Of a stretch of 64,000 bases of DNA, positions 28,318 through 59,055 are shown in pieces. The notes below the pieces were generated by a model. It saw only the letters and a list, made by a program, of their open reading frames with translations, did no database searches and was not told the origin of the DNA. The position numbers and the translations under genes are program-made. Every line of letters begins with the position of its first letter. Position 1 is the stretch's first letter. The stretch spans positions 165,747-229,746 of the IMG/VR virus record IMGVR_UViG_3300024308_000018. The stretch is one strand, 5' to 3'.

Positions 28318-30237
28318 TTATTCTGCAATGCGTTGAACTTTGCAGTACAGCACAGGCGTCGGCTCGTTCGTGAGCGGCTGTGCGTTACGTACCGGATACA
28401 TGAACACCTTGCCTGAGTTGTTGTCGGTGGCGTAGATCTGGAACGTGCGGTGCTTCTGCGACGCGATGGTGTAGAGCGGAGCACCAATGACCGGAGGCTT
28501 CTCGCGCAACAGTCGGATACTCTCTTTCTCGTCGGCGCTCAGGGCCGGGAACTTGAAGTCGATCAGCGCCTTGGTCTGCGCCCACTTGGCGGAAACCTTG
28601 ACGTTGTTGACCCCAATGTTATGCAGCCACTGATACACTCGACGCACGGCCCCATACACATCATCACGACCTACGCGGCCGCCAACGATGTCGAATACCA
28701 GACCCTTGGTGGTCGGGCGCGGTTTCAGATGTCCGCTGAAGAAGCCTTCATTGAACAGCTTGGTGATCGCCAGCCGTGTTTCCGCAGGGTCGAAGTCGCT
28801 CCAACTGACGTTGATGTCGTCGGGGTCGATGTCCGTCCATGGCCGCTCTTCGCGCACGTCGTCTGACCCGATGGGCGACACGTAGGAAACCATGCGCACG
28901 AACGTTGCCTTCGACTTGATTTCCGCAGTAGACATGGCGACCGCGCGCTTGTTGATCTGCGTGACCAGCGGAGATTGCCGCACGATCTTGTAGAGTTCAA
29001 CCTTACCTGCTTTCGTCATGGAATCGCCAGCAGCCTGACGCAACGTGTCGAGCTGGCGGGTGAGTGCTGCGCGTGTCGGTGCGTACACCACCCAGCTGTC
29101 TTTCGCGTGCTGCTCATGCGGAGTAACAGCGAGGAAGCCGTAATCGGAATCCGCAATGGTCTTCGGCGACGGGATGGTCGTGGTACGTGGGCCGACGGTC
29201 GGGCTCGTTACCGGGACAGTCACGCGTGTGGTAGCTTTCTCGATCTCAGCCAACTGCTTTTCAGCACCCTGCTTACTGGTGTAGCCAAGCTCTTTCCACT
29301 GGGAGAGAGTACGGCCAGCTGCCAGCAATGCGCGGATGTCTTCGGCGTGTGCGGCCAACGCTGCCGCCACGTACTGCTGCTCGCGCGGCTTGGCAAGCAG
29401 CGCCATACCGATTTGCGCAGTCGTCATGTTCTTGTACGCTGGGCGCTTGTTGTTGCGCAGTGCATTTTCGATGGGGTCATCGGAAGCAACAGGGTGATAC
29501 ACGTTGCCCTTATTGTCGACCTCCAACTCGGTGCCCTTGTAGACGTTGCCGCCGATAAGCACGGTGAAGTTCGGGTCGCCGACGTACTTGGGATCAATGG
29601 GCCCGCCGTCGTACTGGTGCACGGTGTTGGGCTTCTTATCCTTCAGCTTTTCTTCAACCTGCTGCGCGATAGTCTGGACGGCCTTCGGCTTGAACGACGC
29701 CTTCAGTCGCGCGACCTTGGTCTTCGGCAGGTAGGTTTCCATCGGGGTTTTGAGATCGAAGCAGAAGTAATGGCGCTTGTTGCTGTCCATATACATCTTG
29801 ATCCCGGCAGCGAGGAACCACTTGTGAGTAGTGGTGTCGTTGATGTCCTCGGTGATCGTGCCGATCTCTGTGAAGTTGGCTCGGTTTACGCCTTTGCCTG
29901 TAGCGTACAACAGGTTGTCGAGATCCATCTTCTTGGGGAACTTGGTGCCCGCCAGAATCTGCATGATCTTCGCACGGTCGCTAACGTAGAAGAACTCGCG
30001 CTTACGCTCAATCTTCAACACGATGGCGACTTTACCACGGGCATTTGCTGCGGGCACCAACTCGTAGGCTTCACCCTTATCGACCGCTGCGTCCCAGTCG
30101 TCGTTACCGTCGATGTCTATGGACGCACTGCCCATATACTTCAAGCGAATCGGAGCCACGGCGGACTCCGAAGTCATCGGTTCAACGTTACTGAGGCTCT
30201 GCATGCGGACGCCAAAATTACGCTGGATCACATTCAC
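28318..30237 (-). CDS. Putative internal head (virion cargo) protein
   Basis: AGGAGG RBS with a GTG start. N-terminal SLS and SES motifs; basic; N-domain loosely resembles the 43204 protein. Confidence 0.6.
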   Translation of the reverse strand: MNVIQRNFGVRMQSLSNVEPMTSESAVAPIRLKYMGSASIDIDGNDDWDAAVDKGEAYELVPAANARGKVAIVLKIERKREFFYVSDRAKIMQILAGTKFPKKMDLDNLLYATGKGVNRANFTEIGTITEDINDTTTHKWFLAAGIKMYMDSNKRHYFCFDLKTPMETYLPKTKVARLKASFKPKAVQTIAQQVEEKLKDKKPNTVHQYDGGPIDPKYVGDPNFTVLIGGNVYKGTELEVDNKGNVYHPVASDDPIENALRNNKRPAYKNMTTAQIGMALLAKPREQQYVAAALAAHAEDIRALLAAGRTLSQWKELGYTSKQGAEKQLAEIEKATTRVTVPVTSPTVGPRTTTIPSPKTIADSDYGFLAVTPHEQHAKDSWVVYAPTRAALTRQLDTLRQAAGDSMTKAGKVELYKIVRQSPLVTQINKRAVAMSTAEIKSKATFVRMVSYVSPIGSDDVREERPWTDIDPDDINVSWSDFDPAETRLAITKLFNEGFFSGHLKPRPTTKGLVFDIVGGRVGRDDVYGAVRRVYQWLHNIGVNNVKVSAKWAQTKALIDFKFPALSADEKESIRLLREKPPVIGAPLYTIASQKHRTFQIYATDNNSGKVFMYPVRNAQPLTNEPTPVLYCKVQRIAE

Positions 30238-30880
30238 GGGGGCCTCCTACAGAAAGCTGTGCTTCACAGCACAGGTACGGCCAAAGTTCATGGTGGATCT
30301 GCTCGATTGTCTTGCCGACAACGTTGACAACCAGAACGTTTTGCTCGCGTGCTGCGGCCTGACGGTAGCTTGACATCAGCGCCTCATACTTGGAGCGTTC
30401 GGTGTAGCGCTTCTCGATAGCGTCGAGCTGCTGACCGTCCCCGGTACGCGCATTACGGCGTTCCAGATAGGTGTCGTAGTCGAGTTCGAGGAACACGTAC
30501 AGCGGGGTGATCGGAGCGGCTATCTTCTTGTAGCGCAGGAACATGTCACGCAGTACGTCGTCGTTGCCGCACTGATAGATGTCGGTGCTGGGCGAACCAC
30601 GGTCACCCAACACAACCTTGCCCTGCTCCAAAGCCGGAATGATCCGCTTGTGGAACAGATCAGCACGTGCCGCCATCATTGCAAACAGCTCGGCTTCCGG
30701 GCTTGGATCGTATTCACCGTGCAGCACGCTCGCACGCATCGCTTCAGCGAAAGGGGTGCCGCCCGGCTCACGGACGACCTCCACTTCCACACCGCGCGCT
30801 TGAAGCTGCTCTGCAATGAACGCAATCAGAGAGGACTTGCCAGCGAAGTCCGGGCCTTCAAGTACGATGTAACTATCCAT
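30218..30880 (-). CDS. tmk: Thymidylate kinase
   Basis: YIVLEGPDFAGKSS P-loop, REPGGT, ELFAMMAARA, VLGDR. Confidence 0.95.
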   Translation of the reverse strand: MDSYIVLEGPDFAGKSSLIAFIAEQLQARGVEVEVVREPGGTPFAEAMRASVLHGEYDPSPEAELFAMMAARADLFHKRIIPALEQGKVVLGDRGSPSTDIYQCGNDDVLRDMFLRYKKIAAPITPLYVFLELDYDTYLERRNARTGDGQQLDAIEKRYTERSKYEALMSSYRQAAAREQNVLVVNVVGKTIEQIHHELWPYLCCEAQLSVGGPRECDPA

Positions 30881-30889
30881 GAGTCACCT

Positions 30890-32113
30890 TTACTTGCCAG
30901 AGTACATTTTGACTTTGTTGCTGAACACGTCGGCGACCAAAGTATCGAACAGCGCACGCGCTTCGGCCTTGGCTGCCTTGAAGTCGCCGGAGTCCACAGC
31001 GGTGGAGAAGATGCGCTGCATATCGGCGGTGAACTTCGGCGGCACGCGGCACTGACGCTTGCCCAACTGCTTGGTGAAGTTCATCAGAGCGAACTGGGCA
31101 TTCTCTTTGGCCTTGCGACGCAGCTCAACCTTGGTCATTTCTTCCGGCTTGAGTCGGTTCATGACGCGCGCTTTGAAGTCAGCCTGAGTACCAGCCATGA
31201 CTTTCGCGAACTCAACGTAGCCGTAGGTCAGACCCAGCACGTTGTTCACGTAGTTCTTCACGGAGTCGATACCGCGCAGCCCTTCGATCTTGGTGGTTTC
31301 GGCCAGAGCTTCGTTGCCCTTCTGAACGGAGGTGATCACCCGGTTGTACGCGGCGCAGTGCTTGCGGATGTTCTCGATGGACTTGGCAGTCATGGCAGGA
31401 GCCTTGGTCAGCATGCCTTGGAACTGGTTACGCAACTTGGTAGCGGCCAGAATCTGGGCCTTCTGCTTCTCTTCCTTGGTAGCAGCCTTGGTGGTCGGCA
31501 CAACCTTGTCGGCCGGAGCTTTCACCGGAGCTTTCTTGCCATCGGCAACAGCTGCGTCTCTCTTTTCCATGATGGTGGTCAGGGCTTTGGTGACTGCATC
31601 CTTGCTGAGCAGGCGCGACTGGTTCGGATATTGAACGCTGTGCATACCAGCCCACTCTTCCACCGCTTTCTGGACTGCGGTCGCCATATTCTTGCCCTTG
31701 GCGAATCGGACTTTGTAGGACAGGCGATCAGCAATCTCTGCAATCTCACCCTTGGAGAACTTCTTGGCTTTAGCCTTGGTTCCATCGGGAGCAGAGAACC
31801 CAGCAGGCTGCCGACCGGACGGGGAGGTAGCGAGATCGCGCTTGGGGTTTCCAGTATTCACCTTGGGTTTGAATGCGGGTTTCTTGGTTTTCCCGTTGGC
31901 GTTGAGCAGGCTCGTAAGTCTACCAAGTTTCTCTTGCGCCTCCTTCTTGCTGGGGAAGCCCGCAGCTTTTATCTCGGCAACAGGGCCGATAGACAGATCG
32001 TTGAGGCGGCGAATAGTTGGCAGCAACGGGGCAGCCAGTTTGCTTCCGCCAATCAGGGCGTCAACGATTTCAGCCAAAGACTTCTTGGCAGATACCGACA
32101 GTTGAATTTCCAT
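30890..32113 (-). CDS. Lys/Ala-rich basic putative internal head protein
   Basis: Leader MEIQLSVSA, highly basic, high-expression codons. Confidence 0.6.
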   Translation of the reverse strand: MEIQLSVSAKKSLAEIVDALIGGSKLAAPLLPTIRRLNDLSIGPVAEIKAAGFPSKKEAQEKLGRLTSLLNANGKTKKPAFKPKVNTGNPKRDLATSPSGRQPAGFSAPDGTKAKAKKFSKGEIAEIADRLSYKVRFAKGKNMATAVQKAVEEWAGMHSVQYPNQSRLLSKDAVTKALTTIMEKRDAAVADGKKAPVKAPADKVVPTTKAATKEEKQKAQILAATKLRNQFQGMLTKAPAMTAKSIENIRKHCAAYNRVITSVQKGNEALAETTKIEGLRGIDSVKNYVNNVLGLTYGYVEFAKVMAGTQADFKARVMNRLKPEEMTKVELRRKAKENAQFALMNFTKQLGKRQCRVPPKFTADMQRIFSTAVDSGDFKAAKAEARALFDTLVADVFSNKVKMYSGK

Positions 32114-32127: not shown

Positions 32128-32847
32128 TTATTGAATCCAGATGTTGTTGAATGGGACTGTGTGCTTGACGATCTTGCCTTTGTCGTCAGTCGTGGTGATC
32201 AACGCTTTCTCGCTCGGCAGCAGAAACATGAGGCGTCCAATGTGGTCGAGGGTTCCCTCACTGAACTGAACATCCTGCCCGCGCAGTCGGCTGATCTGCC
32301 ACGCGGTCTTCGTAAACTTCACCGCGCCTTTCGCCCGTGCTTCACGTCCTACAAGGAATTGCAGGAAGTGCTTGCGGGCTTGCAACGCGTGGTCGTCCTG
32401 AACCCGAGTCACGTCAGTGTTGAGCATAGCGAATGCGGTGGCGTGTTCGATGGCCTTGAAGTTCAGAGCCTCAACTCGCGCACCGCTTGCCAGCCCGAGT
32501 TCCACAACGTAACGTCCCTTGGCAAACTTGTGGATGCCGATGGACGAGTTGTTCATGCGGTTAGTCCACACGATGGAAAACATATCGGAGCCTTCAAGAC
32601 GGGTGGTGATCGTGATAGGCCCGAACCGGGTGTGCTGGCTACTACGCGACGCCTGCTGCGCGTTGGATGCAGATTCAATCTCACCCAGCATGCAGGCTTC
32701 GGCCTCACGCTTGTCACGCAGCTTGCGCGCAGATTCAAACATCTCGCCAAACATGTTGTCGAAGATGTCGCCGAAACTTTCAGCGAAGGAGAGGCTGGCG
32801 AATTCTGATTCCGTTTTTACTTGATTCAATCCTAATGCAATGTTCAT
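32128..32847 (-). CDS. Putative internal head protein
   Basis: Leader MNIALGLN...ASLS. GGAGAG RBS and TAATG coupling. Confidence 0.6.
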   Translation of the reverse strand: MNIALGLNQVKTESEFASLSFAESFGDIFDNMFGEMFESARKLRDKREAEACMLGEIESASNAQQASRSSQHTRFGPITITTRLEGSDMFSIVWTNRMNNSSIGIHKFAKGRYVVELGLASGARVEALNFKAIEHATAFAMLNTDVTRVQDDHALQARKHFLQFLVGREARAKGAVKFTKTAWQISRLRGQDVQFSEGTLDHIGRLMFLLPSEKALITTTDDKGKIVKHTVPFNNIWIQ

Positions 32848-33383: not shown

Positions 33384-33909
33384 AAGCATCCTCACGGATC
33401 GGTTCCCAAGTCTCGCCGCCGAAGACGAGGCGCACGCCACTGAACGCACCAGCATTCAGACCCTGATTGAGCAAATCCAAGTCCAGCTGGTCGGCAGGAA
33501 CTTTGATCGTCATGTGCGGCTCATACTCAGGGTAGCTGTGACGGTAGCCCATCTGACGCAGGTACTTGTGACGCGCGATCAGACCTTGACTATCCAGCTT
33601 CAGCACCAGCGTGTTCTCTTCGGGCCCGAAGAGCGCACCGCTATTCACGGTAGCCTCGATCTGAATCGGGGCCGCCGGATGGAACAGCACGGGGTTTTCG
33701 CGGTCGTACATCATTGTCACGTGCAGGTCTTTGGGGTCGAAGTCAGTCTTCAGACCGATCTTCTCCAACTCAGACATGACAAACCGCACGGTCTCCGGAG
33801 TGGGATACACAGCAGCGTAGCCAGCGGGGGTCGTGCGGTCGGGGTCGTTCTGGCGGCCACGGCGTCGGGTGGATTCCGAAACCATGTTGAGGCCGAGATT
33901 GATGTTCAT
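33352..33909 (-). CDS. acb1: Anti-CBASS nuclease Acb1-like 2H phosphoesterase with an N-terminal leader
   Basis: Two HxT motifs (LHVTMMYDR, PHMTI). TLVLKLDS..L..RH.Y.R..G..H.Y..Y.PH.T and E..EP match T4 gp57B/Acb1 as I recall it. Confidence 0.82.
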   Translation of the reverse strand: MNINLGLNMVSESTRRRGRQNDPDRTTPAGYAAVYPTPETVRFVMSELEKIGLKTDFDPKDLHVTMMYDRENPVLFHPAAPIQIEATVNSGALFGPEENTLVLKLDSQGLIARHKYLRQMGYRHSYPEYEPHMTIKVPADQLDLDLLNQGLNAGAFSGVRLVFGGETWEPIREDAYAKYEETDDE

Positions 33910-33919: not shown

Positions 33920-34312
33920 TTACAGGGCGTCCATCGGCATGCGCATCAGGACAACGCTATGTTGATAACTGAGAGGCACATTTGCCAACTTGGCGTCGTC
34001 GGAACGCACAGAAGTCACGCGCCCGATAGGGGAACCATGCGCAACACGATCAATGAGATACGACGTGACCACAGAATTGTCTACTGGGTCTTCCACCGCA
34101 AACCCGATGGGGTCTTTGGTGGTGAGCGACGGCGCGCCCAGCACAACGAAGTTGAGATCTTCCACGTGGTCGGGGTTCACTTTCTTCAGTGCTGCGCGAA
34201 TCGGGTTGGGGGCATTGGCGTATGCAGCTTTCCGAACACGGTCAAGGAACGTGATTACGGGGTCTGCGGACAGCGAAGCGTTAGCAACGCAAAGGTTGAG
34301 TTCAATGTTCAT
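33920..34312 (-). CDS. Putative internal head protein
   Basis: AGGAGG RBS and leader MNIELNL...ASLSA. Confidence 0.6.
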   Translation of the reverse strand: MNIELNLCVANASLSADPVITFLDRVRKAAYANAPNPIRAALKKVNPDHVEDLNFVVLGAPSLTTKDPIGFAVEDPVDNSVVTSYLIDRVAHGSPIGRVTSVRSDDAKLANVPLSYQHSVVLMRMPMDAL

Positions 34313-41096: not shown

Positions 41097-41098
41097 GG

Positions 41099-43869: not shown

Positions 43870-43878
43870 AGATCCTCC

Positions 43879-43900
43879 AAAGGGGGCACTAGGCCCCCTT
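43879..43900 (-). terminator. Terminator after the tail tube gene
   Basis: - strand GGGGGC-CTAGT-GCCCCC-TTT. Confidence 0.8.
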
Positions 43901-43913
43901 ATCGCTACTGCGT

Positions 43914-48556: not shown

Positions 48557-49653
48557 TGACGCTTAGCCAGAGCCAGACCTTGGGTGTTGGCAACAACCAT
48601 GGACAGGATTTCGCTGATCAGCCAGCCCTTGTCGGTGTTACCTTCGTTGGCGCCAGTGGTAGCTTCGCTGGTTGCGCCGCCGCGAGTGGTGTACGCGCCG
48701 AGGTATTCCGGAGTGGCGAAGGTAAACAGGGTGCCACGTTCCAGAACACGTTGGGTCGGATCACGGAAACCGTCGGTGATCAGATCCATGCCCAGCAGGG
48801 TAGCCAGACGGCCAGTGCTCAGCAGCTCGTAACGGGTAACCGGTTCCAGAGCTTCCATCCACACGGAGCCACCGATCATGTCAGTCCAGAAGTCGGAAGA
48901 CAGAACGGTGCCCGCGACCGGAATGTTCCAGCTGTCGATCTGGTCGCGCATGGCGGCCAAGTGACCCGGCAGCAGCTTGTCGTGCAGGTAGGTGATCGGG
49001 TTGCCACGACCAACGGCCTGATATACGGCGTCCATGAACAGACGGTCTTCTTTGACCACTACGGACTGGTGAGCGTCGCGCTCAGCACGGCCCATCAGGT
49101 CACCAGCGATCTGGTGCATGTCGATCACCGGAACGCGCACAGCGGACTTGACTTCGAACTCTTGCGGGTTGAAGACTTTGCCGCGCAGGATTTGGTAACC
49201 CAGATCGGACGGGCCAGTTGCGACCACGGCGTGGCAGACGTGTTGTTTCAGTTCGACACGCGCGATTTCGCCTTGACGCAGGGTGCTGCCTTGCAGCAGG
49301 TTACGCATCAGGCCGGAACGCTCGGCACGGTCTTCAACGCGTGCAACGATGCTGGAGCCCAGAGACGCCCACTTGGACGGATCGTTGGCAGCTTCCATGA
49401 ACACTTCGTTGCCCAAACGGATGCGGTCAGCGCTGGACATGGAAGCCTGCATGGAGCCGACTTGATCTTCTTGAACCAGAACGACGTCGCCGTTCTTCAT
49501 CATGTCCATGTAACGTTGGCCTTGGGCCAGCGCGTCTTTCTTGTTGATGGCGTTCAGGTCGCCGGATGCGGAGAACATCGGCAGGTCGGTAACGGGACGG
49601 CCATCGCGAGTAACGGCAACAACAGCGCCCTTGGCTTTTGCATATTGAGTCAT
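48553..49653 (-). CDS. Major capsid protein (HK97 fold)
   Basis: AGGAA RBS gives MTQYAK at 49653. Strongest codon bias in the window. Lies downstream of protease and scaffold. HK97-like pattern (VVVKEDRLF, TGRLATLLGMDLITD). Confidence 0.85.
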   Translation of the reverse strand: MTQYAKAKGAVVAVTRDGRPVTDLPMFSASGDLNAINKKDALAQGQRYMDMMKNGDVVLVQEDQVGSMQASMSSADRIRLGNEVFMEAANDPSKWASLGSSIVARVEDRAERSGLMRNLLQGSTLRQGEIARVELKQHVCHAVVATGPSDLGYQILRGKVFNPQEFEVKSAVRVPVIDMHQIAGDLMGRAERDAHQSVVVKEDRLFMDAVYQAVGRGNPITYLHDKLLPGHLAAMRDQIDSWNIPVAGTVLSSDFWTDMIGGSVWMEALEPVTRYELLSTGRLATLLGMDLITDGFRDPTQRVLERGTLFTFATPEYLGAYTTRGGATSEATTGANEGNTDKGWLISEILSMVVANTQGLALAKRQ

Positions 49654-49684
49654 GAGAAGGAATTCCTGTTCAAAGTGGTAGGTT

Positions 49685-49710
49685 ATGTGGGGGCGAACAT
49701 CGCGCCCCAC
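49685..49710 (-). promoter_or_regulatory. GC hairpin in the MCP 5' leader
   Basis: GTGGGGCG.../...CGCCCCCAC between the TAATTTG motif and the MCP RBS. No U-tract. Confidence 0.45.
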
Positions 49711-50449: not shown

Positions 50450-50519
50450 GAGATTGATTCCTTGTAGGACGTAATGGTTACTGGGCACCGTATCGTTGGT
50501 GCCCAAAGTTCAGCGACAT

Positions 50520-52817
50520 TTATTTCAGGCCGAGGGCCGCCATCTTCTGTTCCCATGCGAGGGCGTCAGAGGACTTGGAGGCGATCTTGTCTTCAGGCTC
50601 TTGCGCAGGCTTGCGCACGACCTTACCGATTTCGGTAGCGCCGTTGGCAGACACGGAGGCAACGTTGATCTCTTCGATGGCACGGCTTACTTCGTTGTAG
50701 CCTTCGACAGACATTGCGCTCAGGGACTGTGCACGGGAGTAGACGGAAGCCATGAGTTCGGCACCCTGTTCGGCGAAGGCCGAGGATACCATCTCACGGG
50801 CGCTGCTCAGGCTCATGCCACCAGCAACCATCTTGTTCACCAGCGCGGACGCAACAGCGTTGTCATCCTGCTTCCAGAAGCCGCGAGTCAGACCGACAAA
50901 TGCGGTGCTGACGCTTGCTTGGTAGCGTTCGGTGGTATCGGCAACGATGGTGTTGATTTCGCTTTGCAGACGGTCGGCACGCTCGTCAGCGGACTTGCTT
51001 GCACGTTGTTGCAGAACGTTGCTGACGCTGACGTTGAATTCCACCGGAGTGAAGCCCAAGTCGGTCAGGGCCTGCTCCAGACCGTTCTCGCGGGCCGAAG
51101 CACTGAGTACGTTAGGCAGAGTACCGTTGCGGAACAGCAGCTTGGCCTTGTCTTCGTCACCCAGCGCAGTAGACAGAGCGGTCAGGTTCAGGGAACCCAG
51201 CGGCAGGTTGTCGTAGATGGCGTGATAGCGGCTCTTACCGTCGAACACACAGGACAGAGAGTCGAGGTTGAATTCCGCATCAGCGACCAAGGCTTCCGCC
51301 GCGCTGATAGAAATTACCGAACTCTCGGATTCCATGTCACCATCTTCGTCCTCGAAGTCCAGCTCGGAAAGCTCGTCGTCGGTCAACATGGTGTCGGGAT
51401 CTTCGCCATCATCATCACCTTCGTCGCCGGAGGTGGATTCCAGAGAGAAGTCGCCAGTGGCTTCGAAATCGGACTCTTCGTCCTCTTCCTCGTCCTCTTC
51501 GTCTTCTTCGTCTTCTTCGTCTTCGTCGTCGAATTCAGGCATGTCGTCACCTTCGTCTTCGTCGTCGAAGTCGTCACCGGACAGGCTGGCTTCGCCATCG
51601 TCGCCCATGTCTTCGTCGTCGTCGAGTTCGAGGTCTTCCTCTTCCTCGTCGTCGAACTCTTCTTCCTCACCGGAAGCAGACAGGAGGTCTTCGTCTTCCG
51701 CATCCAGCTCGGCCAGATCGGATTCCAGATCGTCGAGGGAAGACTCGTCGCCAACGGTGTCGGCGGCGGGCAGGTCGGCCAGATCTTCTTCGCTCGGTTC
51801 TACCAGCGGAGCGTCGCACTCGGAGCAGAAGTTGGCATCAGCAGAGCTGCACGCCATGAAACCGCAACCGTCGTGGCACTTGAACAGGTGAATGTTCAGA
51901 GCGTCGTGGGCGAGTTCAGCACCAGTGCCAGACAGAGAATCCATCACGCTGCTGGTAACGTTGTTACCGGTGTACGGGTTGAACGCGCACGCAGAGTTGG
52001 AGATGAAGTTCTCGTCGGTGTTCTTGTGATCGAAGTGGCTTGCGTTCGGCGCGCCGTTGATCAGAAGGTCGCGCAGCCCGTTAAGGGCACCGGACACTGA
52101 CGGAGCGAATACGTGCAAACGCTGATCAATTTTTCCAATTTTCTTGATCATGTTCTCGGGTTCCTCAAGGGGAGCGTTACAGTGAGCGCAGAAAACGATG
52201 TCCGCCGAAGTAGACAACGTTACAGGGTGGCTGCAACCAGCAGCGCACTTGAATTTGTGAAACACGCCGCTGAATTCAGCAACGTTGGAGCAGCTTCGTA
52301 CCGACTCTTGACCGCTATACGGATCGTAGTTCAACGTTGCGAGTTCCCCCGACAACGATGGCACGGTGCCGGAGCGCAAGGCACGGGCATAAGCAGCGGC
52401 TTGCTCTTCGGTTCCGCAGAACAGAGGGTCGCTACCTTGCAGCAGGGCGTCAGACTCGGAGCCGAAAACGAGGTCGTGAATATCTTCCTCGCTTGCGGTG
52501 AGTGCTGCGGAGCATGAAGGGCAACGTTGCAACTGGGATTCAGACAGGATGAAGGATTGGCAGCCATCCAGACACACGGTCAGGTTAGCTTCCGCTTCCG
52601 CACTGGTAGAGGCGAATTCCGTGCCCTCTACCCCATCAAAATCATGCACTGTGCCGTAACCGCAAGGGTCATAGGCAATGCCGTTAGTTGCGAACACGGC
52701 ACCGGATTCCGATGCCATGAAACGCGCGTTCTTCCCTGTAGCAACGTCCGAAAACGCTGCTACAACTCCCGCCTTGCTGTTAGCTGCCACGACTATGCCT
52801 TTGTAGAGCTTAGACAT
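50520..52817 (-). CDS. Prohead core/scaffold protein with Cys-rich ribbons, an acidic tract and a C-terminal coiled coil
   Basis: Position upstream of the MCP. Three C...C-x(12-16)-C..C modules, a D/E tract at about 51350-51800, and about 25 SxS motifs. Confidence 0.7.
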   Translation of the reverse strand: MSKLYKGIVVAANSKAGVVAAFSDVATGKNARFMASESGAVFATNGIAYDPCGYGTVHDFDGVEGTEFASTSAEAEANLTVCLDGCQSFILSESQLQRCPSCSAALTASEEDIHDLVFGSESDALLQGSDPLFCGTEEQAAAYARALRSGTVPSLSGELATLNYDPYSGQESVRSCSNVAEFSGVFHKFKCAAGCSHPVTLSTSADIVFCAHCNAPLEEPENMIKKIGKIDQRLHVFAPSVSGALNGLRDLLINGAPNASHFDHKNTDENFISNSACAFNPYTGNNVTSSVMDSLSGTGAELAHDALNIHLFKCHDGCGFMACSSADANFCSECDAPLVEPSEEDLADLPAADTVGDESSLDDLESDLAELDAEDEDLLSASGEEEEFDDEEEEDLELDDDEDMGDDGEASLSGDDFDDEDEGDDMPEFDDEDEEDEEDEEDEEEDEESDFEATGDFSLESTSGDEGDDDGEDPDTMLTDDELSELDFEDEDGDMESESSVISISAAEALVADAEFNLDSLSCVFDGKSRYHAIYDNLPLGSLNLTALSTALGDEDKAKLLFRNGTLPNVLSASARENGLEQALTDLGFTPVEFNVSVSNVLQQRASKSADERADRLQSEINTIVADTTERYQASVSTAFVGLTRGFWKQDDNAVASALVNKMVAGGMSLSSAREMVSSAFAEQGAELMASVYSRAQSLSAMSVEGYNEVSRAIEEINVASVSANGATEIGKVVRKPAQEPEDKIASKSSDALAWEQKMAALGLK

Positions 52818-55800: not shown

Positions 55801-57008
55801 TCATAACCAGCAGTGCGTGTGGCGGGTGCCATGCGCATAATCACGGAGAGCGTGTTCGCCACGTGAGTTACGTGCTTGCTAGGTTCTATAGAGATCAACG
55901 TGTCGATGAACCAGCGACAGATCGGATCCAACTCTTCCTGAGTGTTGGCTGGCGAGTTACGCAGTGAAGAGAACGGCACTACGCCTTCACAGCCGCTGTC
56001 GATAAACGAGCAGATGTAGCGCAGGGCGAACCACTCGGGATACGCACCAGTCGGCGTCTTCGGCACGTCGCGGTAGAAGGTCTCCATCTGGTCGACGTAA
56101 CCACTGAGGGCACCCAGTACCGTGTTGGCTGCGCTCATATCGTTGAACATGTTGCCGCTTACTGCGCGGGCGTAGTCCTGACGAATCTGGCCCACCATGA
56201 AACGCGGCATCAGGGTTTCAAAGTAGTTGTATTTGCTGCGGGTGACATTCACCAGATTCTCACGGATTACTTTGTACCGTGGAATGTTCGGGTACGTCAT
56301 GCGTGCCGTGGAGTTCAGCGCGAACTCAATCACGTTGGTGAACTGGTAAAGCAGCGTGAAGAACTCTTGGGGAGCGCCGGAGATCTCTGCCTGCCACGCC
56401 ATAACGTAGGGAGCGGCGGCAGGTGGCAGGTCTTCCAGAGCGTAACCGCCGACAGTGAACGCGTCGTTCACCGCTTCATCGAACAGGGTAGCCAGATCTT
56501 TGAAGTTGGGATGGCGGACGACTTCACTCATGCCGTAGTCGTACATGGCCTCGCGAACTTCCGAATCGATCATGACTGCCAAGTGCATGCCACGGCGGTC
56601 ACGGGAGGTCAGCACTTTGGTAGAGATGGCAGCAAGGGCGAGACCGAGCGAGTCGCTGTTCACGTCGACTGGCGAGGGCTGTTGGGGCTTAGCAGATTCA
56701 GGTTCGGGCTTCGCGGGTTCGGGGTCTGGAATGCTGCCCGTTACTTGGGCTTCCAGCTCGGGATCCAGTGCGAGACCTTCAGGCCAAATATCCTGCACAC
56801 CGAACGAGAAATTCATCGACTGTTCGGAGATGGCTTCAACAACGGAACGTGCGACTGGAGCCATCTTGTTGCTCCCGTCGATTGCACAATCCACGAATTG
56901 CTGGCCCTTGATGTTGCGCATGTTCCCCTCGAACCAAACGCTCTGGGGCTGCACGGTGAACGGCCCCAGTTGAGCGGGGGCCACGCCGTAATAAAGTTTT
57001 ACACCCAT
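52863..57008 (-). CDS. Large (1381 aa) putative virion protein with a C-terminal HExxH motif
   Basis: TAATG coupling to the protease gene. LTHEFAHYFH at 53112-53126. Helical [ML]RP-containing repeats. Confidence 0.65.
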   Translation of the reverse strand: MGVKLYYGVAPAQLGPFTVQPQSVWFEGNMRNIKGQQFVDCAIDGSNKMAPVARSVVEAISEQSMNFSFGVQDIWPEGLALDPELEAQVTGSIPDPEPAKPEPESAKPQQPSPVDVNSDSLGLALAAISTKVLTSRDRRGMHLAVMIDSEVREAMYDYGMSEVVRHPNFKDLATLFDEAVNDAFTVGGYALEDLPPAAAPYVMAWQAEISGAPQEFFTLLYQFTNVIEFALNSTARMTYPNIPRYKVIRENLVNVTRSKYNYFETLMPRFMVGQIRQDYARAVSGNMFNDMSAANTVLGALSGYVDQMETFYRDVPKTPTGAYPEWFALRYICSFIDSGCEGVVPFSSLRNSPANTQEELDPICRWFIDTLISIEPSKHVTHVANTLSVIMRMAPATRTAGYDPAEDRRWPAIASLYRFLKNGVWEKYATVGNAVTATCEAELNQMIEAAAPAQNIAVYGYQPALVHVSKIRSYANEAVAKGNIYSAPVVTFIADGMVGVNPLSSIAVNSFDDLWEHVEWMLRDFAATRLAQYRTSSVGKVENAPRDLTTTDVADQIRAACDLTSHWRPYGMRPAQYESQARGLGLRAVIASKFRQWYNDVDIMEVAATIVREASEKLDDKKQQPKAADQWNEIVTETRGMFIVQRPANLEQMTASNIVEWESASAHLRKMGDVLAGALGDALDLSITRQAFVDLCPLAPNLTTEQYMDAAVCITRIIHKAKGASANTKDGQRDSALQGLIKVYNMLSDLRPIGMSVSDGRRSAPTHYRDVFRNVRALHTNENALESFVLTCFPSEDDLFEFVGKFLSAVQLVGLRPLAKSSPSLSDMREFNQILLEWRNQFRDRATGENQERYENWWNDFMDGAAERNLPLNLKMSWEDVSSLILRSAQRSSLRTEVELRQFIENLCSELYDMGNHMRPLFITPIRWGDVAPKPFYYAIEGLTDVVDGTAYGKVNVSNLLVAALPKTGSGTGIDLEISAMVVPLNAIENKRVRMRRGASMLHDIRMKAASDPLIYTKWEGAFAEFKHAPVTGLATTMMFDSLMAKVNSFVDEFLGTESGTTEQVAGHVVDAVQAVLEAAIEMRPLDMSPTAWNDLKMRPQIAPAIRGATVQLRAFLETPENVINHALKRWPTQISDAGRYGKDSAPQNVPRANDGKIAYTSFEEGSGDAEYRKVTPTTPPTGVDNSEVFTGSVSYQANKIFEAALRQGFNGGRTYRLSDDILEDLAKNSKCLGMTRKLPAGNFVVVGTEGSGATCIATFNSGGRMVSVIYINMSEIAQHLGGANTQTVLQALTHEFAHYFHKGLKGTALLDWKKATSGRKLHPAQGKDAYAFDTEQFAILAETMVSGNSVRGLYNCNGINVVERFFVNNFITPEDRQKLA

Positions 57009-57799
57009 TACCAACGTTCCTTATTGCGAGGATCCATTACGGATTCTGGGTCGGGAGACGCGCACACGAATGCTGGATTGCGCACGGCACTGGTCTCGAA
57101 ACCTTCGAGCACGTGGCACTGGCGATAAGCGAGACGGCCATCGGGTCGACGCATTACGCGGTTGCCGACGTGTCCGCACAGCCGCTTGCTACTGCCAGTG
57201 AAGGTTTCGCCGCACACCGAGCAGGTATACGCTTTGTACCACGTGCCCTTGGAGTAGGTGTTGTGCTTACCGGACAGAATGTCACGGCACAACTCGGGCT
57301 CAAGGTTGCGGTCGTAGGCCAGCAGCAAAATCAGACGACCGTGCGCTTTGTGGAAACCTTGCAGCTTCGACAGTTGGGCGTCGAAGATTGCGCCACGTGC
57401 GATGCGGTGGTTCTGGTTGTTGTGCTCGATGAAGGTGGGCTTACCCTTGAAGGTCTTGTACGCCAGCTGCCCGAATTCCGGACGGAAGGTCAGCCAGTCT
57501 TTGAGACCGAACGCGTCGCCGTTGGTATTGGGGATCCCCGACACGTTGACGACTGTAGGATGCAGCACGTAGTCGCGGATGTCGCGGCTGATGTTGTAGT
57601 GCTCGGCAGCAGCGGGCAGCCAAGTGTTCACGTCGAGGTTAACGGATTCGCGAACACCCATGCTTTCGCCGCGAACGGAGATTGACTTCGACTGGCGGGA
57701 GGCTTGCAGCTTGTGCATGTCGAGGCCGCGCGGAATCGAGACCCCAACGTCGAAGGATACGGAACGGAACGCTCCCTTGGATACATCAAATTCGCTCAT
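57008..57799 (-). CDS. Prohead maturation protease (serine, assemblin/HK97-like, with a Cys/His Zn-type insert)
   Basis: GKPTFIEH (catalytic His), TYSKG (Ser), CSVC...CGH, GFETSAVRNPAF. GGAG RBS gives start 57799. Confidence 0.78.
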   Translation of the reverse strand: MSEFDVSKGAFRSVSFDVGVSIPRGLDMHKLQASRQSKSISVRGESMGVRESVNLDVNTWLPAAAEHYNISRDIRDYVLHPTVVNVSGIPNTNGDAFGLKDWLTFRPEFGQLAYKTFKGKPTFIEHNNQNHRIARGAIFDAQLSKLQGFHKAHGRLILLLAYDRNLEPELCRDILSGKHNTYSKGTWYKAYTCSVCGETFTGSSKRLCGHVGNRVMRRPDGRLAYRQCHVLEGFETSAVRNPAFVCASPDPESVMDPRNKERW

Positions 57800-57801
57800 T
57801 G

Positions 57802-59055
57802 TTATCTCCGAAGAACTGAAACGGCCCACTGCTTAGCAAACTCATAAGGCATGCGGGCGGGATTAACGAGCACGATGTCGTTACGATGGATCGCGGTGTA
57901 CGGCTCAAGGGTCGCTTCGTCGCGGTCGGTGCGGTACGCGTTTTCGTTGAAGCCATCGACCAGCACACTGTACCAGCCGTTCGCCTCTTTGCTCGGCGTG
58001 CCGTATTTCTTATCCCACATGAGGAAGCCGCGAATCTTGCGGCCGACTACCAGCAGGTAGCGGCGACCGCACTCTTCTTCGAGTCCGCGATAGTAGTCCA
58101 CGGGGCAGCGACGGATCTTAACTTCGATGCCAGTGCTGCTGGTACTGGTGAACTCGCCGTCAGCGCTCTTCTTGATGGCGTCAAGGTTGAGACCTTCCGC
58201 CCAGTCCATGAAGGTTTCGACCAAGCGGTCGCACTCGTCACCAGACAACGAGGCGTAGGCAGCAGAGCGTGACATGCTCGCAGCGTCCAGAGTGCTGTTG
58301 ATGAAGAAGCACGCCAAGATAGCGGGCAACGCACCAGCACCAGCGGCAGCAGCACCAACACCAATGAGGCCGTATGCTGCAATCTTGGCAATCGGCAACG
58401 TTGCCTTGATTGCGCGAACCATGGTGCTCGCGTCCTCTTGGGTCTTCGGCTTCATCTTCTTGACAACAGCCGGAATGTCACCGCGATTAATCTCTTCGCG
58501 GGAACCACTCAGATCAGCACGGGTGCCGGGGCTACGGCCACTGTCGAGAGCGCCGAAGAACGCACGAAGGCCCGCCTTCAGCGCATCGGGCAATGAGCTG
58601 CGGTAGGAATCAGCCATTGCAGAGCGCGGAGGGATCGGGCGAGTTTCACGGATAGCAGGTGGCCGTGGTTGTGACTCTTCGTTTTCGTCTTCGTCTTCGA
58701 AGTCGGCGTCTTTCAGATCTTCCTTGGGTTCAGCTTCAGACTCTTCTTCAGAGTCGTCTACATCGGCCTCGCCTTCCTCGTCTTCCTCGTCGCCATCTTC
58801 GCTGCCATCAGCGGCATCGGCCCCACCAACGTTGTCAGCAACATTGCCGCCACCAGCTTGGTTGCGGAACTTGGCCTTCTTGGAAGCATTCTTGTTCAGC
58901 GGCTTCAGTGCGAGCTGGCGATTTTTCACCATCTTGGCGTATTTCCCTTTGGGGTGACGCTTGATGTGGGCACGCTGCTTTTCAGGAGAACGGCTTTCCC
59001 ACCAGCTACTCGCCGACTCGCTCAAGCAAATCGGTTCTTTTGAATTTGTGTGCAT
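57802..59055 (-). CDS. Putative internal head protein with an acidic linker and a hydrophobic hairpin
   Basis: SES near the N-terminus, WW...EKQ..HIKRHP.GK motif, and a Gly/Ala-rich hydrophobic segment. The start is uncertain. Confidence 0.55.
   Translation of the reverse strand: MHTNSKEPICLSESASSWWESRSPEKQRAHIKRHPKGKYAKMVKNRQLALKPLNKNASKKAKFRNQAGGGNVADNVGGADAADGSEDGDEEDEEGEADVDDSEEESEAEPKEDLKDADFEDEDENEESQPRPPAIRETRPIPPRSAMADSYRSSLPDALKAGLRAFFGALDSGRSPGTRADLSGSREEINRGDIPAVVKKMKPKTQEDASTMVRAIKATLPIAKIAAYGLIGVGAAAAGAGALPAILACFFINSTLDAASMSRSAAYASLSGDECDRLVETFMDWAEGLNLDAIKKSADGEFTSTSSTGIEVKIRRCPVDYYRGLEEECGRRYLLVVGRKIRGFLMWDKKYGTPSKEANGWYSVLVDGFNENAYRTDRDEATLEPYTAIHRNDIVLVNPARMPYEFAKQWAVSVLRR

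What the first reader, a model, noticed from the sequence alone, without database searches (positions are those of the whole stretch)
28318..59055. Shared N-terminal leader (M-x-[IL]-x-[LI]...S-x-S-[AG]) defines a candidate capsid-targeting/cleavage code
Seen, N-termini of unrelated - strand genes: MEIQLSVSA (32113), MNIALGLN...ASLS (32847), MNINLGLNMVSES (33909), MNIELNL...ASLSA (34312), MLLNLSLSA (43869), MKLNIKTVSVSA (45179), MKLSAS...SISA (48556), ...MQSLS...TSESA (30237), ...CLSESA (59055). The MCP has FSASG and ASMSSA, and the protease itself has RSVS and SKSIS. The metabolic enzymes (DHFR, TS, TMK, ligase) lack such a leader. Known: T4 gp21 cuts after [IL]-x-E and phiKZ gp175 after [SAG]-x-E. 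Inference: this lineage's prohead protease uses S-x-S, which would predict the injected proteome from sequence alone.
Basis: partly seen in the sequence, partly recalled or inferred. Interest (0 to 1): 0.8.

Follow-up and report, generated by a model that had tools for sequence, protein, structure and literature searches.

The report
Ser-x-Ser leader code of jumbo-phage head
A short N-terminal tag ending in Ser-x-Ser-Ala marks many unrelated proteins of this giant phage and its relatives, and the same tripeptide fills the scaffold-like protein, so it is most likely the cutting signal of the head-maturation protease and flags proteins packed into the capsid, including an anti-CBASS enzyme.

Summary

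**In the window**
- Seven proteins carry S-x-S-[AG] in their first 30 residues, against 1.5 expected (P about 0.001). All seven lie in the minus-strand structural block.
- The acidic 765-aa protein between the protease and the capsid gene has 16 copies, against 1.9 expected.
- The capsid protein has two sites. The protease has one at its own N-terminus.

**In relatives**
- The sites are kept in orthologs that are only 30-50% identical.
- Across 80 related loci the motif is 3.4-fold enriched in the first 15 residues; permuted controls give 0.7-1.5-fold.
- The consensus leader is M-K-I-x-Φ-x-Φ-S-x-S-A, found on about 47 unrelated protein families.
- These families include Acb1 (anti-CBASS), NUDIX, an NAD-dependent ligase, DarA_C and SprT-like proteins.
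- In distant clades Ala replaces Ser.

**Other evidence**
- The T4 and phiKZ glutamate motifs are not enriched.
- The published ~20% mass loss of the PaBG capsid protein matches cutting at the second capsid site.

**Reading**
This is most likely a small-x-small cleavage motif of a gp21-like prohead protease, and the short propeptides work like the T4 capsid-targeting sequence. No experiment here shows cleavage, targeting or injection. I rate it a new variant of a known kind.

The parts
57008..57799 (-). Head-maturation (prohead) protease, 263 aa from the ATG start; the ORF finder extends it to the GTG at 57829.
   Evidence: It matches PHROG 18299 'head maturation protease' at E 3e-90. The AF2 model has pLDDT 82. 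Its top PDB fold hits are T4 gp21, entry 5jbl (E 0.1). Many BFVD 'prohead serine protease' models match at E 1e-6 to 1e-3. H126, S183 and a C193/C196/C208/H210 cluster are invariant in 26 homologs.
57752..57763 (-). S13-V-S15-F16, the predicted autoprocessing site at the protease N-terminus.
   Evidence: The pattern [SA]-x-[SA]-F is conserved across protease homologs down to 34% identity. S-x-S-F is 4.6-fold enriched in N-termini family-wide.
50520..52817 (-). Acidic (pI 4.1) 765-aa scaffold/core-like protein carrying 25 S-x-S, 16 of them S-x-S-[AG]; the predicted multi-cut substrate.
   Evidence: It has 16 S-x-S-[AG] against 1.9±1.35 in shuffles, z=10.3. The residue after S-x-S is A or G in 16 of 25 cases (P=9e-7). 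Homologs in Yen9-02, Alexandra and JA13 have 24-29 S-x-S against 9-13 expected. The gene lies between the protease and the MCP. The PaBG ortholog gp82 is absent from the PaBG virion band list.
48553..49653 (-). Major head protein with an HK97 fold, 366 aa from the ATG at 49653.
   Evidence: It matches PHROG 2522 at E 1e-78. Relatives are 44-48% identical. The AF2 model matches HK97 and encapsulin folds at E 1e-9.
49561..49572 (-). MCP site 1: S28-A-S30-G31.
   Evidence: It aligns with L-S-x-S-T-G-E-[IF]-N-A in most relatives. In some distant clades the sequence is L-D-x-K-T instead, so this site is less general than site 2.
49432..49443 (-). MCP site 2: S71-M-S73-S74, the predicted maturation cut, which would remove 73 aa (20%).
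   Evidence: The site sits in a hypervariable linker where nearly all of about 40 loci keep a small-x-small tripeptide (SxS, AxA, AxS); L082 has no clear one. In the AF2 model the motif lies at the end of a low-confidence stretch (residues 62-72), just before helix 74-90. The PaBG MCP is reported to lose 'about 20%' of its mass, and a cut at the aligned A-P-S71 gives 40.2 to 32.6 kDa.
48125..48556 (-). Small acidic (pI 4.1) protein next to the MCP. Its leader is MKLSASLIAMSIS|A, and it has three internal S-x-S-S.
   Evidence: The internal sites SVS[SA] and ALS[AS] are conserved in 20 orthologs. Its position and acidity resemble small prohead-core proteins; that comparison is an inference.
45144..45179 (-). 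Leader MKLNIKTVSVS|A of a 245-aa basic (pI 10.2) Ala/Lys-rich protein, 44442-45179.
   Evidence: The sequence is shown. This gene has the highest codon-usage score in the window. It has no family match and is absent at this position in Yen9-02, Alexandra and JA13.
43843..43869 (-). Leader MLLNLSLS|A of the 221-aa KMPT-N-domain protein, 43204-43869.
   Evidence: It matches Pfam KMPT-N at E 2.6e-12. Ortholog leaders are MLLLLSTSA, MLILLSESA and MLFFVSVSA. In the Lu11-type clade the leader is MIISLAAAA or MIIAIAAA.
34265..34312 (-). Leader MNIELNLCVANASLS|A of a 130-aa protein of unknown family, 33920-34312.
   Evidence: The sequence is shown. It has no PHROG or Pfam match.
33868..33909 (-). Leader MNINLGLNMVSES|T of the 185-aa Acb1-family protein, 33352-33909.
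   Evidence: It matches Pfam Acb1 (PF23474) at E 5.9e-18 over residues 31-174. The leader, with invariant S11 and S13, is kept in 7 homologs down to 55% identity. An independent Acb1 homolog in L067 starts MKIQISLSA.
32785..32847 (-). Leader MNIALGLNQVKTESEFASLS|F of a 239-aa protein of unknown family, 32128-32847.
   Evidence: The sequence is shown. It has no family match.
32087..32113 (-). Leader MEIQLSVS|A of a 407-aa basic protein, 30890-32113.
   Evidence: The sequence is shown. It has no family match. It closely resembles the NUDIX leader MEIMISLSA of Yen9-02.
30160..30237 (-). 25-aa leader ending TSES|A of a 639-aa protein, 28318-30237. The start is a GTG preceded by AGGAGG.
   Evidence: The sequence and upstream region are shown. 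The Yen9-02 ortholog has RSES|A at the aligned place, while Alexandra and JA13 lack it, so this site is less certain.
59011..59073 (-). Leader ending LSES|A of the 423-aa protein upstream of the protease, 57802-59073. It also has SRSA and SLSG at residues 268-278.
   Evidence: The sites are listed. The protein matches PHROG 31537. Related proteins in other loci start with a leader followed by '..WWKK..RKAYI..HP', for example MDYGITSLSA and ..ISLSAQESNWWKK.
62996..64000 (-). C-terminal part of an acidic repeat protein that runs off the window, which is also the end of the contig. In the close relative L009 its N-terminus is MQLSISSIASTS|A followed by a KMPT-N domain.
   Evidence: The reading frame is open to the window end. 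The full gene is seen in L009 at 2497-4806. It matches Pfam KMPT-N at E 7e-8. Orthologs start MHSLSA, MILSVSA and MLSQSA.

Best explanation
**Proposed mechanism.** The gp21-like prohead protease (57008-57799) of this jumbo-phage lineage recognises a small-x-small tripeptide. In this clade that is S-x-S, most often followed by A or G, in place of the x-x-Glu sites used by T4 and phiKZ.

**Predicted events inside the prohead.**
- The protease trims its own N-terminus at S13-V-S15|F.
- It cuts the acidic 765-aa scaffold/core-like protein into pieces of about 30 aa, at 16 or more sites.
- It removes a 73-aa N-terminal domain from the capsid protein, with cuts after S30 and S73.
- It clips short propeptides of 5-25 aa, M-[KNE]-[IL]-x-Φ-x-Φ-S-x-S|A, from a set of unrelated cargo proteins.

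**Role of the leader.** By analogy with the T4 capsid-targeting sequence and the P1 DarB signal, the hydrophobic-alternating leader is proposed to dock the cargo onto the assembling core, so that cargo is enclosed, processed and later ejected with the DNA.

**Shown here.** The motif, its enrichment, its positions, its conservation, the Ser/Ala drift between clades, and the protease fold family.

**Inferred, not shown.** That the protease is the enzyme, that the scissile bond follows the second Ser, that the leader targets proteins to the capsid, and that the cargo is injected.
For: 1. N-terminal enrichment in the window: 7 proteins against 1.5 expected, P=0.0012; 7 of 28 structural-block proteins against 0 of 43 others.
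2. The scaffold-like protein has 16 S-x-S-[AG] against 1.9 expected (z=10.3). The T4 motif [LI]-x-E (z=-1.3) and the phiKZ motif [SAG]-x-E (z=+1.0) are not enriched.
3. Homologs of that protein in Yen9-02, Alexandra and JA13 have 24-29 S-x-S against 9-13 expected.
4. Sites are conserved in orthologs only 30-50% identical. The KMPT-N protein leader has a variable middle residue (L/T/E/V). The protease N-terminal [SA]-x-[SA]-F is kept across 26 or more homologs. Both MCP sites are conserved.
5. Family-wide, across 1308 unique ORFs from 80 loci, S-x-S-[AG] occurs at 5.45 per 1000 aa in the first 15 residues against 1.62 elsewhere (3.4-fold). Permuted controls give 0.7-1.5-fold. With a strict leader pattern, 113 ORFs match against 24 for the control. 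The hits fall into about 47 unrelated families, and the commonest propeptide is 8 aa.
6. Orthologs switch S to A together. SprT-like proteins start MRILISLSA or MKIFVSLSA in Ser-type clades and MKIFIALAA in an Ala-type clade. KMPT-N proteins start MLLNLSLSA against MIISLAAAA. Ala-type clades also have scaffold-like proteins rich in A-x-A and MCP site 2 of the form ATAA or ATAS.
7. Some cargo families are typical of injected or anti-defence proteins: DarA_C, Acb1, NUDIX and SprT-like. Several window cargo proteins are basic.
8. The protease model's best PDB match is T4 gp21, and it matches many 'prohead serine protease' models.
9. Published PaBG data agree. The MCP loses about 20% of its mass, as predicted for site 2. 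The gp82 scaffold-like ortholog is absent from the virion list. gp83, which starts MLIKINLLEAVAA, is a virion protein.
10. MCP site 2 lies in a low-confidence linker just before the first long helix of the model.
11. The leader serines use mixed codon families.
Against: - No mass-spectrometry or N-terminal sequence data exist for any predicted site, and none was found in the searchable literature.
- The register is undecided: the cut could fall after S-x-S or after S-x-S-A.
- The protease fold match to T4 gp21 is weak (E 0.1, TM 0.44-0.47). Pfam gives no family for it.
- In relatives, part of the S-x-S excess in the scaffold-like protein lies in acidic low-complexity runs such as DSESSSDED, which could arise without selection for cleavage.
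- A-x-A excess in distant clades could simply reflect Ala-rich helices.
- MCP site 1 is replaced by L-D-x-K-T in some clades.
- The leaders of 28318-30237 and 48125-48556 are not conserved in all orthologs.
- Two leader genes, 44442-45179 and 43204-43869, sit among tail genes. A capsid-internal role would not be guessed from that position.
- The family-wide scan used longest-ORF starts and includes some spurious ORFs and many closely related Erwinia phages.
Confidence: 0.65

Rival explanations
1. [quoted passage not shown] Cargo enters the prohead through other parts of the protein, and the leader is only a removable pro-piece, for example one that keeps enzymes inactive until they are enclosed.
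For: Very short leaders such as MHSLS|A and MLSQS|A have little room for a docking signal. In SPN3US most head proteins are not cleaved at all, and propeptide roles there are unresolved.
Against: The positions before the motif are non-random: P4 and P5 are hydrophobic, M-K-I is frequent, and the commonest length is 8 aa. The same leader sits on about 47 unrelated families, including enzymes that gain and lose it between orthologs (ligase, NUDIX). This is the pattern described for the T4 capsid-targeting sequence.
Confidence: 0.17
2. The leader is an uncleaved N-terminal beta-strand tag that docks proteins to a virion or assembly partner. The S-x-S repeats in the scaffold-like protein are binding or spacing elements, not cut sites.
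For: The alternating hydrophobic pattern M-x-Φ-x-Φ-x-Φ looks like an amphipathic strand. No cleavage has been shown.
Against: The motif also lies in the MCP N-terminal region. That region is known to be removed in PaBG, with a mass loss that fits site 2. It also lies at the protease's own N-terminus. The PaBG scaffold-like ortholog is not among the virion bands.
Confidence: 0.07
3. S-x-S-[AG] is a sequon for a post-translational modification, for example O-glycosylation by the conserved glycosyltransferase at 59006-60127 beside the head genes, or phosphorylation.
For: A beta-1,4-glycosyltransferase-like gene is conserved next to the protease module in the window and in Yen9-02, Alexandra, JA13 and Lu11. 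Ser-rich sequons are typical of O-linked modification; this last point rests on general knowledge.
Against: In distant clades the sites are Ala-x-Ala at equivalent places, and Ala cannot be modified in this way. The sites cluster at residues 3-15 of unrelated proteins and in a protein that is absent from PaBG virions. They do not cluster on exposed surfaces of mature shell proteins.
Confidence: 0.04
4. A host enzyme is responsible (signal peptidase I with its small-x-small rule, or a Prp-like protease), or the leader is a secretion signal, and the phage protease is not involved.
For: Small residues at -3 and -1 are the signal-peptidase rule. The leaders also look like the L27/80alpha Prp-cleaved leader MLKLNLQFFA. 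Both points are from memory and were not tested here.
Against: The leaders are 5-15 aa long and have no long hydrophobic core. Sixteen or more sites lie inside a very acidic cytoplasmic protein. The phage protease carries the motif at its own N-terminus. Site usage drifts with phage clade, not with host.
Confidence: 0.03
5. The pattern is chance, compositional bias, start-codon miscalls or AT-rich codon bias at gene starts.
For: Ser is common (6.4%), and some ORF starts are uncertain, for example the MCP and 57802-59073.
Against: Shuffle tests reject chance (P=0.0012 and z=10.3). Permuted-motif controls show no enrichment. The sites are conserved in orthologs, the serine codons are mixed, and 47 independent families carry the leader.
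Confidence: 0.02

Closest known systems
T4 gp21 prohead protease with the capsid-targeting sequence of internal proteins IPI-III (MKTYQEFIAE; sequence quoted from memory)
   Same: A short N-terminal tag of about 10 aa is shared by otherwise unrelated, fast-evolving cargo proteins, many of them anti-defence, and ends at the protease site. The same site is repeated in the scaffold core protein, in the capsid protein propeptide and in the protease itself. The gene order protease-scaffold-MCP is the same (PMC3012670).
   Different: In T4, P1 is Glu ([LI]-x-E). Here P1 and P3 are Ser or Ala, and the Glu motifs are not enriched. The protease here has a Cys/His cluster insert and only weak fold similarity to gp21. 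The cargo includes recognisable enzymes (Acb1, NUDIX, ligase).
phiKZ gp175 and SPN3US gp245 prohead proteases ([SAG]-x-E and A-x-E)
   Same: These are jumbo myoviruses in which many head and ejection proteins lose N-terminal propeptides and long propeptides are cut at several sites. P3 is a small residue (S/A/G), as it is here (PMC10052503).
   Different: P1 is Glu there and Ser or Ala here. Most SPN3US propeptides are 111-254 aa long, whereas here most cargo leaders are 5-15 aa. No sequence relationship to these proteases was detected.
Phage P1 Dar system (DarB N-terminal capsid-targeting signal; DarA)
   Same: An N-terminal signal of 30 aa or less directs anti-restriction proteins into the capsid (PMC9024508). 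A DarA_C-domain protein in the related locus L041 carries the leader MEIFISLSA.
   Different: The P1 MCP is cut at E120|S121. No shared short leader consensus across many P1 proteins has been described.
Herpesvirus assemblin ((V/L/I)-x-A|S) and the S. aureus 80alpha/L27 leader cut by host Prp (..KLNLQFFA|); both quoted from memory
   Same: P1 is a small residue and not an acidic one. For Prp, a short hydrophobic-alternating N-terminal leader is shared by the scaffold and capsid proteins.
   Different: Assemblin sites lie at the C-terminal side of the scaffold and have a hydrophobic P3. Prp is a host cysteine protease of Firmicutes, whereas here the relatives infect Proteobacteria and a phage serine-protease-like enzyme is present. 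Neither comparison was tested here.

Membership tests
gp21/assemblin-fold prohead serine proteases (T4 gp21, MEROPS S77 and kin) | Assemblin-like fold | tested here: inconclusive
   The AF2 model has pLDDT 82. The three best PDB hits are all T4 gp21 (5jbl), but only at E 0.1 and TM 0.44-0.47. Forty BFVD matches have E<=1e-3. They include several models named 'prohead serine protease' and COG3740 head maturation protease, with TM 0.3-0.5. The protein matches PHROG 18299 'head maturation protease' at E 3e-90. Pfam gives no hit.
gp21/assemblin-fold prohead serine proteases | Conserved His and Ser catalytic residues | tested here: inconclusive
   H126 (in E-H) and S183 (in N-T-Y-S-x-G) are invariant in 26 homologs and lie 57 residues apart. 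Their geometry and catalytic role were not examined.
gp21/assemblin-fold prohead serine proteases | Gene sits beside the scaffold and major capsid genes | tested here: met
   The order protease, (variable gene), acidic scaffold-like gene, virion protein, MCP is conserved in the window and in most related loci whose 10-kb flank reaches the MCP; in PaBG the protease lies elsewhere in the genome.
gp21/assemblin-fold prohead serine proteases | Cleavage after Glu ([LI]-x-E or [SAG]-x-E) | tested here: not met
   In the scaffold-like protein [LI]-x-E has z=-1.3 and [SAG]-x-E has z=+1.0, with no N-terminal enrichment. S-x-S-[AG] has z=10.3. This is a test of motif usage, not of enzyme activity.
T4-type capsid-targeting sequence (CTS) system | One short N-terminal sequence shared by unrelated proteins and ending at the protease motif | tested here: met
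   There are nine leader proteins in the window with no mutual similarity. About 47 families carry the leader across 80 loci, with a consensus M-K-I-x-Φ-x-Φ-S-x-S-A.
T4-type capsid-targeting sequence (CTS) system | The leader is necessary and sufficient for packaging into the prohead and is removed there | not testable with these tools
   This needs reporter fusions and virion proteomics.
Acb1 anti-CBASS phosphodiesterase (for 33352-33909) | Match to the Pfam Acb1 model above its cut-off | tested here: met
   PF23474 matches at 65.4 bits (cut-off 27), E 5.9e-18, over residues 31-174. Cyclic-nucleotide cleavage was not tested.
Prohead scaffold/core protein (T4 gp22-like role, for 50520-52817) | Present in proheads, degraded by the protease and absent from mature heads | not testable with these tools
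   The support is indirect: position, acidity and 16 motif copies, and the PaBG ortholog gp82 not listed among 14 virion bands. There is no sequence similarity to known scaffolds. The PHROG label for this family is 'ATPase'.

The most novel reading that the evidence does not exclude
A whole lineage of jumbo phages uses one 8-aa address label, M-K-I-x-Φ-S-x-S|A, read by a prohead protease with Ser/Ala specificity at P1. The lineage includes the Lu11/PaBG/Alexandra/Y3/Salmondvirus group and many uncultured relatives.

On this reading, the label is attached to and removed from enzymes over evolutionary time. The phages would thereby pre-load the capsid with ready-made counter-defence and repair enzymes: an Acb1 anti-CBASS nuclease, NUDIX hydrolases, an NAD-dependent DNA ligase, and DarA-like and SprT-like proteins. 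These would enter the cell with the DNA, before any phage gene is expressed. The injected proteome could then be read directly from the sequence.
Probability: 0.4. Interest if true: 0.85.

Novelty: new variant of a known kind. Interest (0 to 1): 0.72.

Why it matters
**Reading cargo from sequence.** Prohead-protease motifs and capsid-targeting tags are established for only a few model phages: T4, phiKZ/SPN3US and P1. A validated small-x-small code would show which proteins are packaged and ejected, from sequence alone. It would apply to a large and mostly uncultured jumbo-phage lineage.

**Anti-defence enzymes delivered as protein.** The tagged set includes an anti-CBASS Acb1 homolog, NUDIX hydrolases, DarA-like proteins and, in some genomes, the DNA ligase. 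This suggests that counter-defence and repair enzymes can arrive as protein together with the DNA. That would change how the timing of anti-defence is understood.

**Practical and mechanistic uses.**
- The leader would be a compact tag of about 8 aa for loading foreign proteins into these capsids, as was done with the T4 and P1 tags.
- It would also show that gp21-like proteases can move their P1 preference from Glu to Ser/Ala.

Tried and rejected
- **Nucleotide relatives.** Megablast of the head module against GenBank phages found nothing, so relatives had to be reached by protein search.
- **Protease against Pfam and PDB sequences.** Pfam gave no family for the protease, the scaffold-like protein or most leader proteins. 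A PDB sequence search with the protease returned only chance C2H2 zinc-finger matches to its Cys/His insert.
- **DNA-level explanation.** A repeated promoter, ribosome-binding site or recent duplication of gene 5' ends was rejected. The codons for the shared residues differ, and serines use both codon families.
- **Paralogy of the leader proteins.** This was rejected by all-against-all BLAST.
- **T4 and phiKZ glutamate motifs.** They were tested and are not enriched.
- **'Virion structural protein' 49736-50449.** I considered its start, MINLQATRVLKTSFA, as another leader. Orthologs have no small-x-small there, so I dropped it.
- **Strict S-to-A co-variation across all substrates.** It holds only partly. 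Some Ala-type clades keep S-x-S at the protease N-terminus and at MCP site 1. I therefore read it as relaxed small-x-small specificity with clade-level drift.
- **Literature.** Searches for a described cleavage motif in this lineage found none. Closed-access papers on phiRSL1, Y3 and Lu11 could not be checked.

Full report
**What the window is**

The window is the last 64 kb of an uncultured 229,746-bp IMG/VR contig, with GC about 56%. It has no nucleotide-level relative in GenBank phages.

Protein searches place it in the jumbo myovirus group that includes Yersinia fHe-Yen9-02, Dickeya JA11/13/29/33/AD1, Erwinia Alexandra/Y3/Yoloswag, and more distantly PaBG, Lu11 and phiRSL1. The capsid protein is 44-48% identical to the nearer ones. 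Gene order is shared with them.

The minus-strand block from 28 to 64 kb holds these genes:
- a head-maturation protease (57008-57799);
- a 1383-aa protein;
- an acidic 765-aa protein that PHROGs labels 'ATPase' (50520-52817);
- a virion protein;
- the major head protein (48553-49653);
- the tail sheath, two tube-like genes, and tape-measure/lysin, baseplate and nucleotide-metabolism genes.

**Checking the observation**

S-x-S-[AG] starts within the first 30 residues in 7 proteins. Within-protein shuffles give 1.5 (P=0.0012). All seven are among the 28 proteins of the structural block, and none is among the 43 other proteins.

The shared serines use both AGY and TCN codons, and the other leader codons differ, so the signal is in the protein and not in the DNA. 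The leader proteins are not similar to each other beyond the leader.

**The strongest new fact**

The 765-aa acidic protein (pI 4.1) between the protease and the capsid gene contains 25 S-x-S. Sixteen of them are followed by A or G. Shuffles give 1.9±1.35 for S-x-S-[AG], so z=10.3. The preference for A or G after S-x-S has P=9e-7. The sites are spread along the whole protein, about every 30 residues.

By contrast, the T4 motif [LI]-x-E (z=-1.3) and the phiKZ motif [SAG]-x-E (z=+1.0) are not enriched.

Homologs in Yen9-02, Alexandra and JA13 have 24-29 S-x-S against 9-13 expected.

Position, acidity and a many-fold repeated site are what one sees in a scaffold or core protein that the prohead protease degrades, as T4 gp22 is (established knowledge). 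In PaBG the ortholog gp82 is not among the 14 virion bands, although its neighbours gp80, gp81 and gp83 are.

**Conservation in orthologs**

- KMPT-N protein (43204-43869): it starts MLLNLSLSA here, and MLLLLSTSA, MLILLSESA and MLFFVSVSA in phages where the protein is only about 32% identical. The two serines are fixed and the residue between them is free.
- Protease: it carries [SA]-x-[SA]-F near its N-terminus in homologs down to 34% identity.
- Capsid protein site 1: SAS|G at residues 28-31 here, aligning with L-S-x-S-T-G-E-[IF]-N-A in most relatives.
- Capsid protein site 2: about 43 residues further on, SMS|S at residues 71-74. It lies in a hypervariable linker where nearly all of the ~40 loci keep a small-x-small tripeptide (SxS, AxA, AxS); L082 has no clear one.
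- Structure around site 2: in the AF2 model the motif lies at the end of a low-confidence stretch (residues 62-72), just before the first long helix, which starts at residue 74. The model matches HK97-type shells over about 280-300 columns.

A cut at site 2 removes 20% of the window protein (39.9 to 32.1 kDa). At the aligned A-P-S71 of PaBG gp80 it gives 40.2 to 32.6 kDa. The PaBG paper reports that the capsid protein loses 'about 20%' of its mass on maturation (PMC7412058). This is the only experimental datum that bears on the model, and it fits site 2 but not site 1.

**Family-wide test**

I fetched 80 loci around protease homologs from IMG/VR and took all plus-strand ORFs of at least 100 aa, giving 1308 unique sequences.

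- S-x-S-[AG] occurs at 5.45 per 1000 residues in the first 15 positions and 1.62 elsewhere, a 3.4-fold difference.
- Five permuted versions of the motif, and T-x-T-[AG], give 0.7-1.5-fold.
- A strict leader pattern matches 113 ORFs, against 24 for its control.
- The hits fall into about 47 unrelated families. A few are probably spurious ORFs.
- The commonest propeptide is 8 residues.
- The consensus is M-[KE]-[IL]-x-Φ-(x-Φ)-S-x-S|A, with hydrophobic P4 and P5.
- Some genomes have five or six such genes within 20 kb (L032, L037, L039, L041, L043, L076).

Pfam identifies several of these proteins:
- Acb1, in the window gene 33352-33909 and independently in L067;
- NUDIX, in L039; the leader-bearing genes annotated as nudix hydrolase in the Yen9-02 and Alexandra records were not themselves scanned;
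- NAD-dependent DNA ligase, in L018 and some Dickeya and Erwinia phages;
- DarA_C, in L041;
- SprT-like, in L047;
- DUF5856.

The same ortholog can have the leader in one phage and lack it in another. NUDIX has it in Yen9-02 and Alexandra but not in JA13. The ligase has it in JA13 and L018 but not in the window.

**Ser and Ala**

In the Lu11- and PaBG-type clades the scaffold-like protein is enriched in A-x-A instead of S-x-S (for example 31 against 16-17 expected). MCP site 2 there reads ATAA or ATAS. Orthologous leaders read MIISLAAAA or MIIAIAAA for KMPT-N, and MKIFIALAA for the SprT-like protein.

The switch is not complete. Some of these clades keep S-x-S at the protease N-terminus. I therefore read the specificity as small-x-small, with clade-level drift in usage. 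That several unrelated substrates drift together argues that one enzyme reads them all.

**The enzyme**

The protease model (pLDDT 82) has T4 gp21 as its three best PDB matches, but weakly (E 0.1, TM 0.44-0.47). It also matches many predicted 'prohead serine protease' structures.

H126 and S183 are invariant. So is a Cys-x-x-Cys...Cys-x-His cluster that gp21 lacks. Membership of the gp21/assemblin fold group is therefore likely but not proven.

The defining Glu specificity of the T4 and phiKZ enzymes is not met. That lowers 'it is a gp21' but not 'it works like gp21'.

**Mechanism proposed**

The protease would act as follows:
- it trims itself;
- it chops the acidic core protein;
- it removes a 73-aa N-terminal domain from the capsid protein;
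- it clips the leaders of cargo proteins enclosed in the prohead.

I favour the bond after the second Ser for three reasons. It keeps the P3/P1 spacing of the T4 and phiKZ motifs. It puts the invariant residue at P1. And it leaves A, G, S or T as the new N-terminus of the cargo. This register is an inference.

The idea that the leader also targets cargo to the core rests on analogy. In T4, diverse internal anti-defence proteins share only a capsid-targeting sequence (PMC3012670). In P1, DarB has an N-terminal packaging signal (PMC9024508).

**Rivals**

The rivals I considered are:
- a cleavage tag that carries no targeting information;
- an uncleaved docking strand;
- a modification sequon read by the neighbouring glycosyltransferase, which the Ala-type clades argue against;
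- a host peptidase;
- chance.

They are weighed in the Rival explanations section of this report.

**Comparison with what is known**

The system works like the T4 gp21 and capsid-targeting-sequence system and like the phiKZ/SPN3US propeptide system. It differs in P1 chemistry, in the very short leaders, and in the range of recognisable enzymes that carry them.

I found no description of this motif for the lineage in the searchable literature. Closed-access papers on phiRSL1, Y3 and Lu11 could not be read. I rate it a new variant of a known kind.

**Caveats**

- No cleavage, packaging or injection has been observed.
- ORF starts in the family scan are longest-ORF guesses.
- Many of the loci are closely related Erwinia phages; I removed only identical sequences and then clustered into families.
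- Part of the S-x-S excess in relatives' scaffold-like proteins lies in acidic low-complexity runs.
- Two window leaders (28318-30237 and 48125-48556) are not conserved in all orthologs.

Noticed in passing
window 33352-33909 (-): This gene is an Acb1-family (anti-CBASS) homolog: Pfam PF23474, E 5.9e-18. It has a 30-aa N-terminal extension made of the leader plus an invariant basic stretch, TRRRGxQNxPxR. It sits on the late structural strand, in the same slot where Yen9-02 and Alexandra have a leader-bearing NUDIX hydrolase.
   Followed up: partly
window 50520-52817 (-): The protein that PHROGs and GenBank records call 'ATPase' shows no Pfam ATPase domain. It has three repeats of a zinc-ribbon-like unit (C-x-x-G-C ... 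C-x-x-C, each followed by APLxEP) and a poly-acidic block of about 120 aa. The 'ATPase' label looks inherited and unsupported.
   Followed up: partly
window 52863-57014 (-): This 1383-aa protein lies between the protease and the scaffold-like gene. Only its last ~170-190 residues (from about residue 1194-1214) match the 350-400-aa proteins found at this position in Yen9-02, Alexandra and JA13. The first ~1200 residues are an unexplained expansion with no family match, and they hold only one S-x-S-[AG].
   Followed up: no
window 57008-57799 (-), residues 193-210: The protease family has an invariant Cys-x-x-Cys ... Cys-x-His cluster that is absent from T4 gp21. It looks like a zinc site. It caused spurious C2H2 zinc-finger matches in the PDB sequence search.
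   Followed up: no
window 44442-45179 (-): A basic (pI 10.2) Ala/Lys-rich 245-aa protein with the leader is inserted between the sheath and tube genes. It has the highest codon-usage score in the window, and Yen9-02, Alexandra and JA13 have no gene at this position. It could be an abundant DNA-associated internal head protein.
   Followed up: partly
window 62996-64000 (-) and L009:2497-4806: This very acidic protein has EEDPDAEE-type tandem repeats and runs off the window, which is also the contig end. In the close relative it is 769 aa, with the leader MQLSISSIASTSA and a KMPT-N domain. It therefore shares a domain with 43204-43869.
   Followed up: partly
window 48553-49710, 49736-50506 and 32847-33455 (-): The longest-ORF starts appear to be too far upstream. 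Alignment with relatives places the MCP start at the ATG at 49653, the virion protein start at the ATG at 50449, and the MmcB-like gene start about 40-47 codons downstream of 33455.
   Followed up: yes
window 59006-60127 (-): A beta-1,4-glycosyltransferase-like gene is conserved inside the head module in the window and in Yen9-02, Alexandra, JA13 and Lu11. Its substrate is unknown. I considered it only as a rival reader of the Ser motif.
   Followed up: no
L006 (PaBG) 16242-17204: PaBG gp83 is a confirmed virion protein (band 9 in PMC7412058). It starts MLIKINLLEAVAAK, an Ala-type version of the leader, and is encoded immediately upstream of the scaffold-like gene.
   Followed up: partly
window 42695-44429 (-): Two tail-tube-like paralogs (43914-44429 and 42695-43207) flank the leader-bearing KMPT-N gene. 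The same arrangement is conserved in Yen9-02, Alexandra and JA13. Why a predicted head-cargo gene sits between tube genes is unexplained.
   Followed up: no
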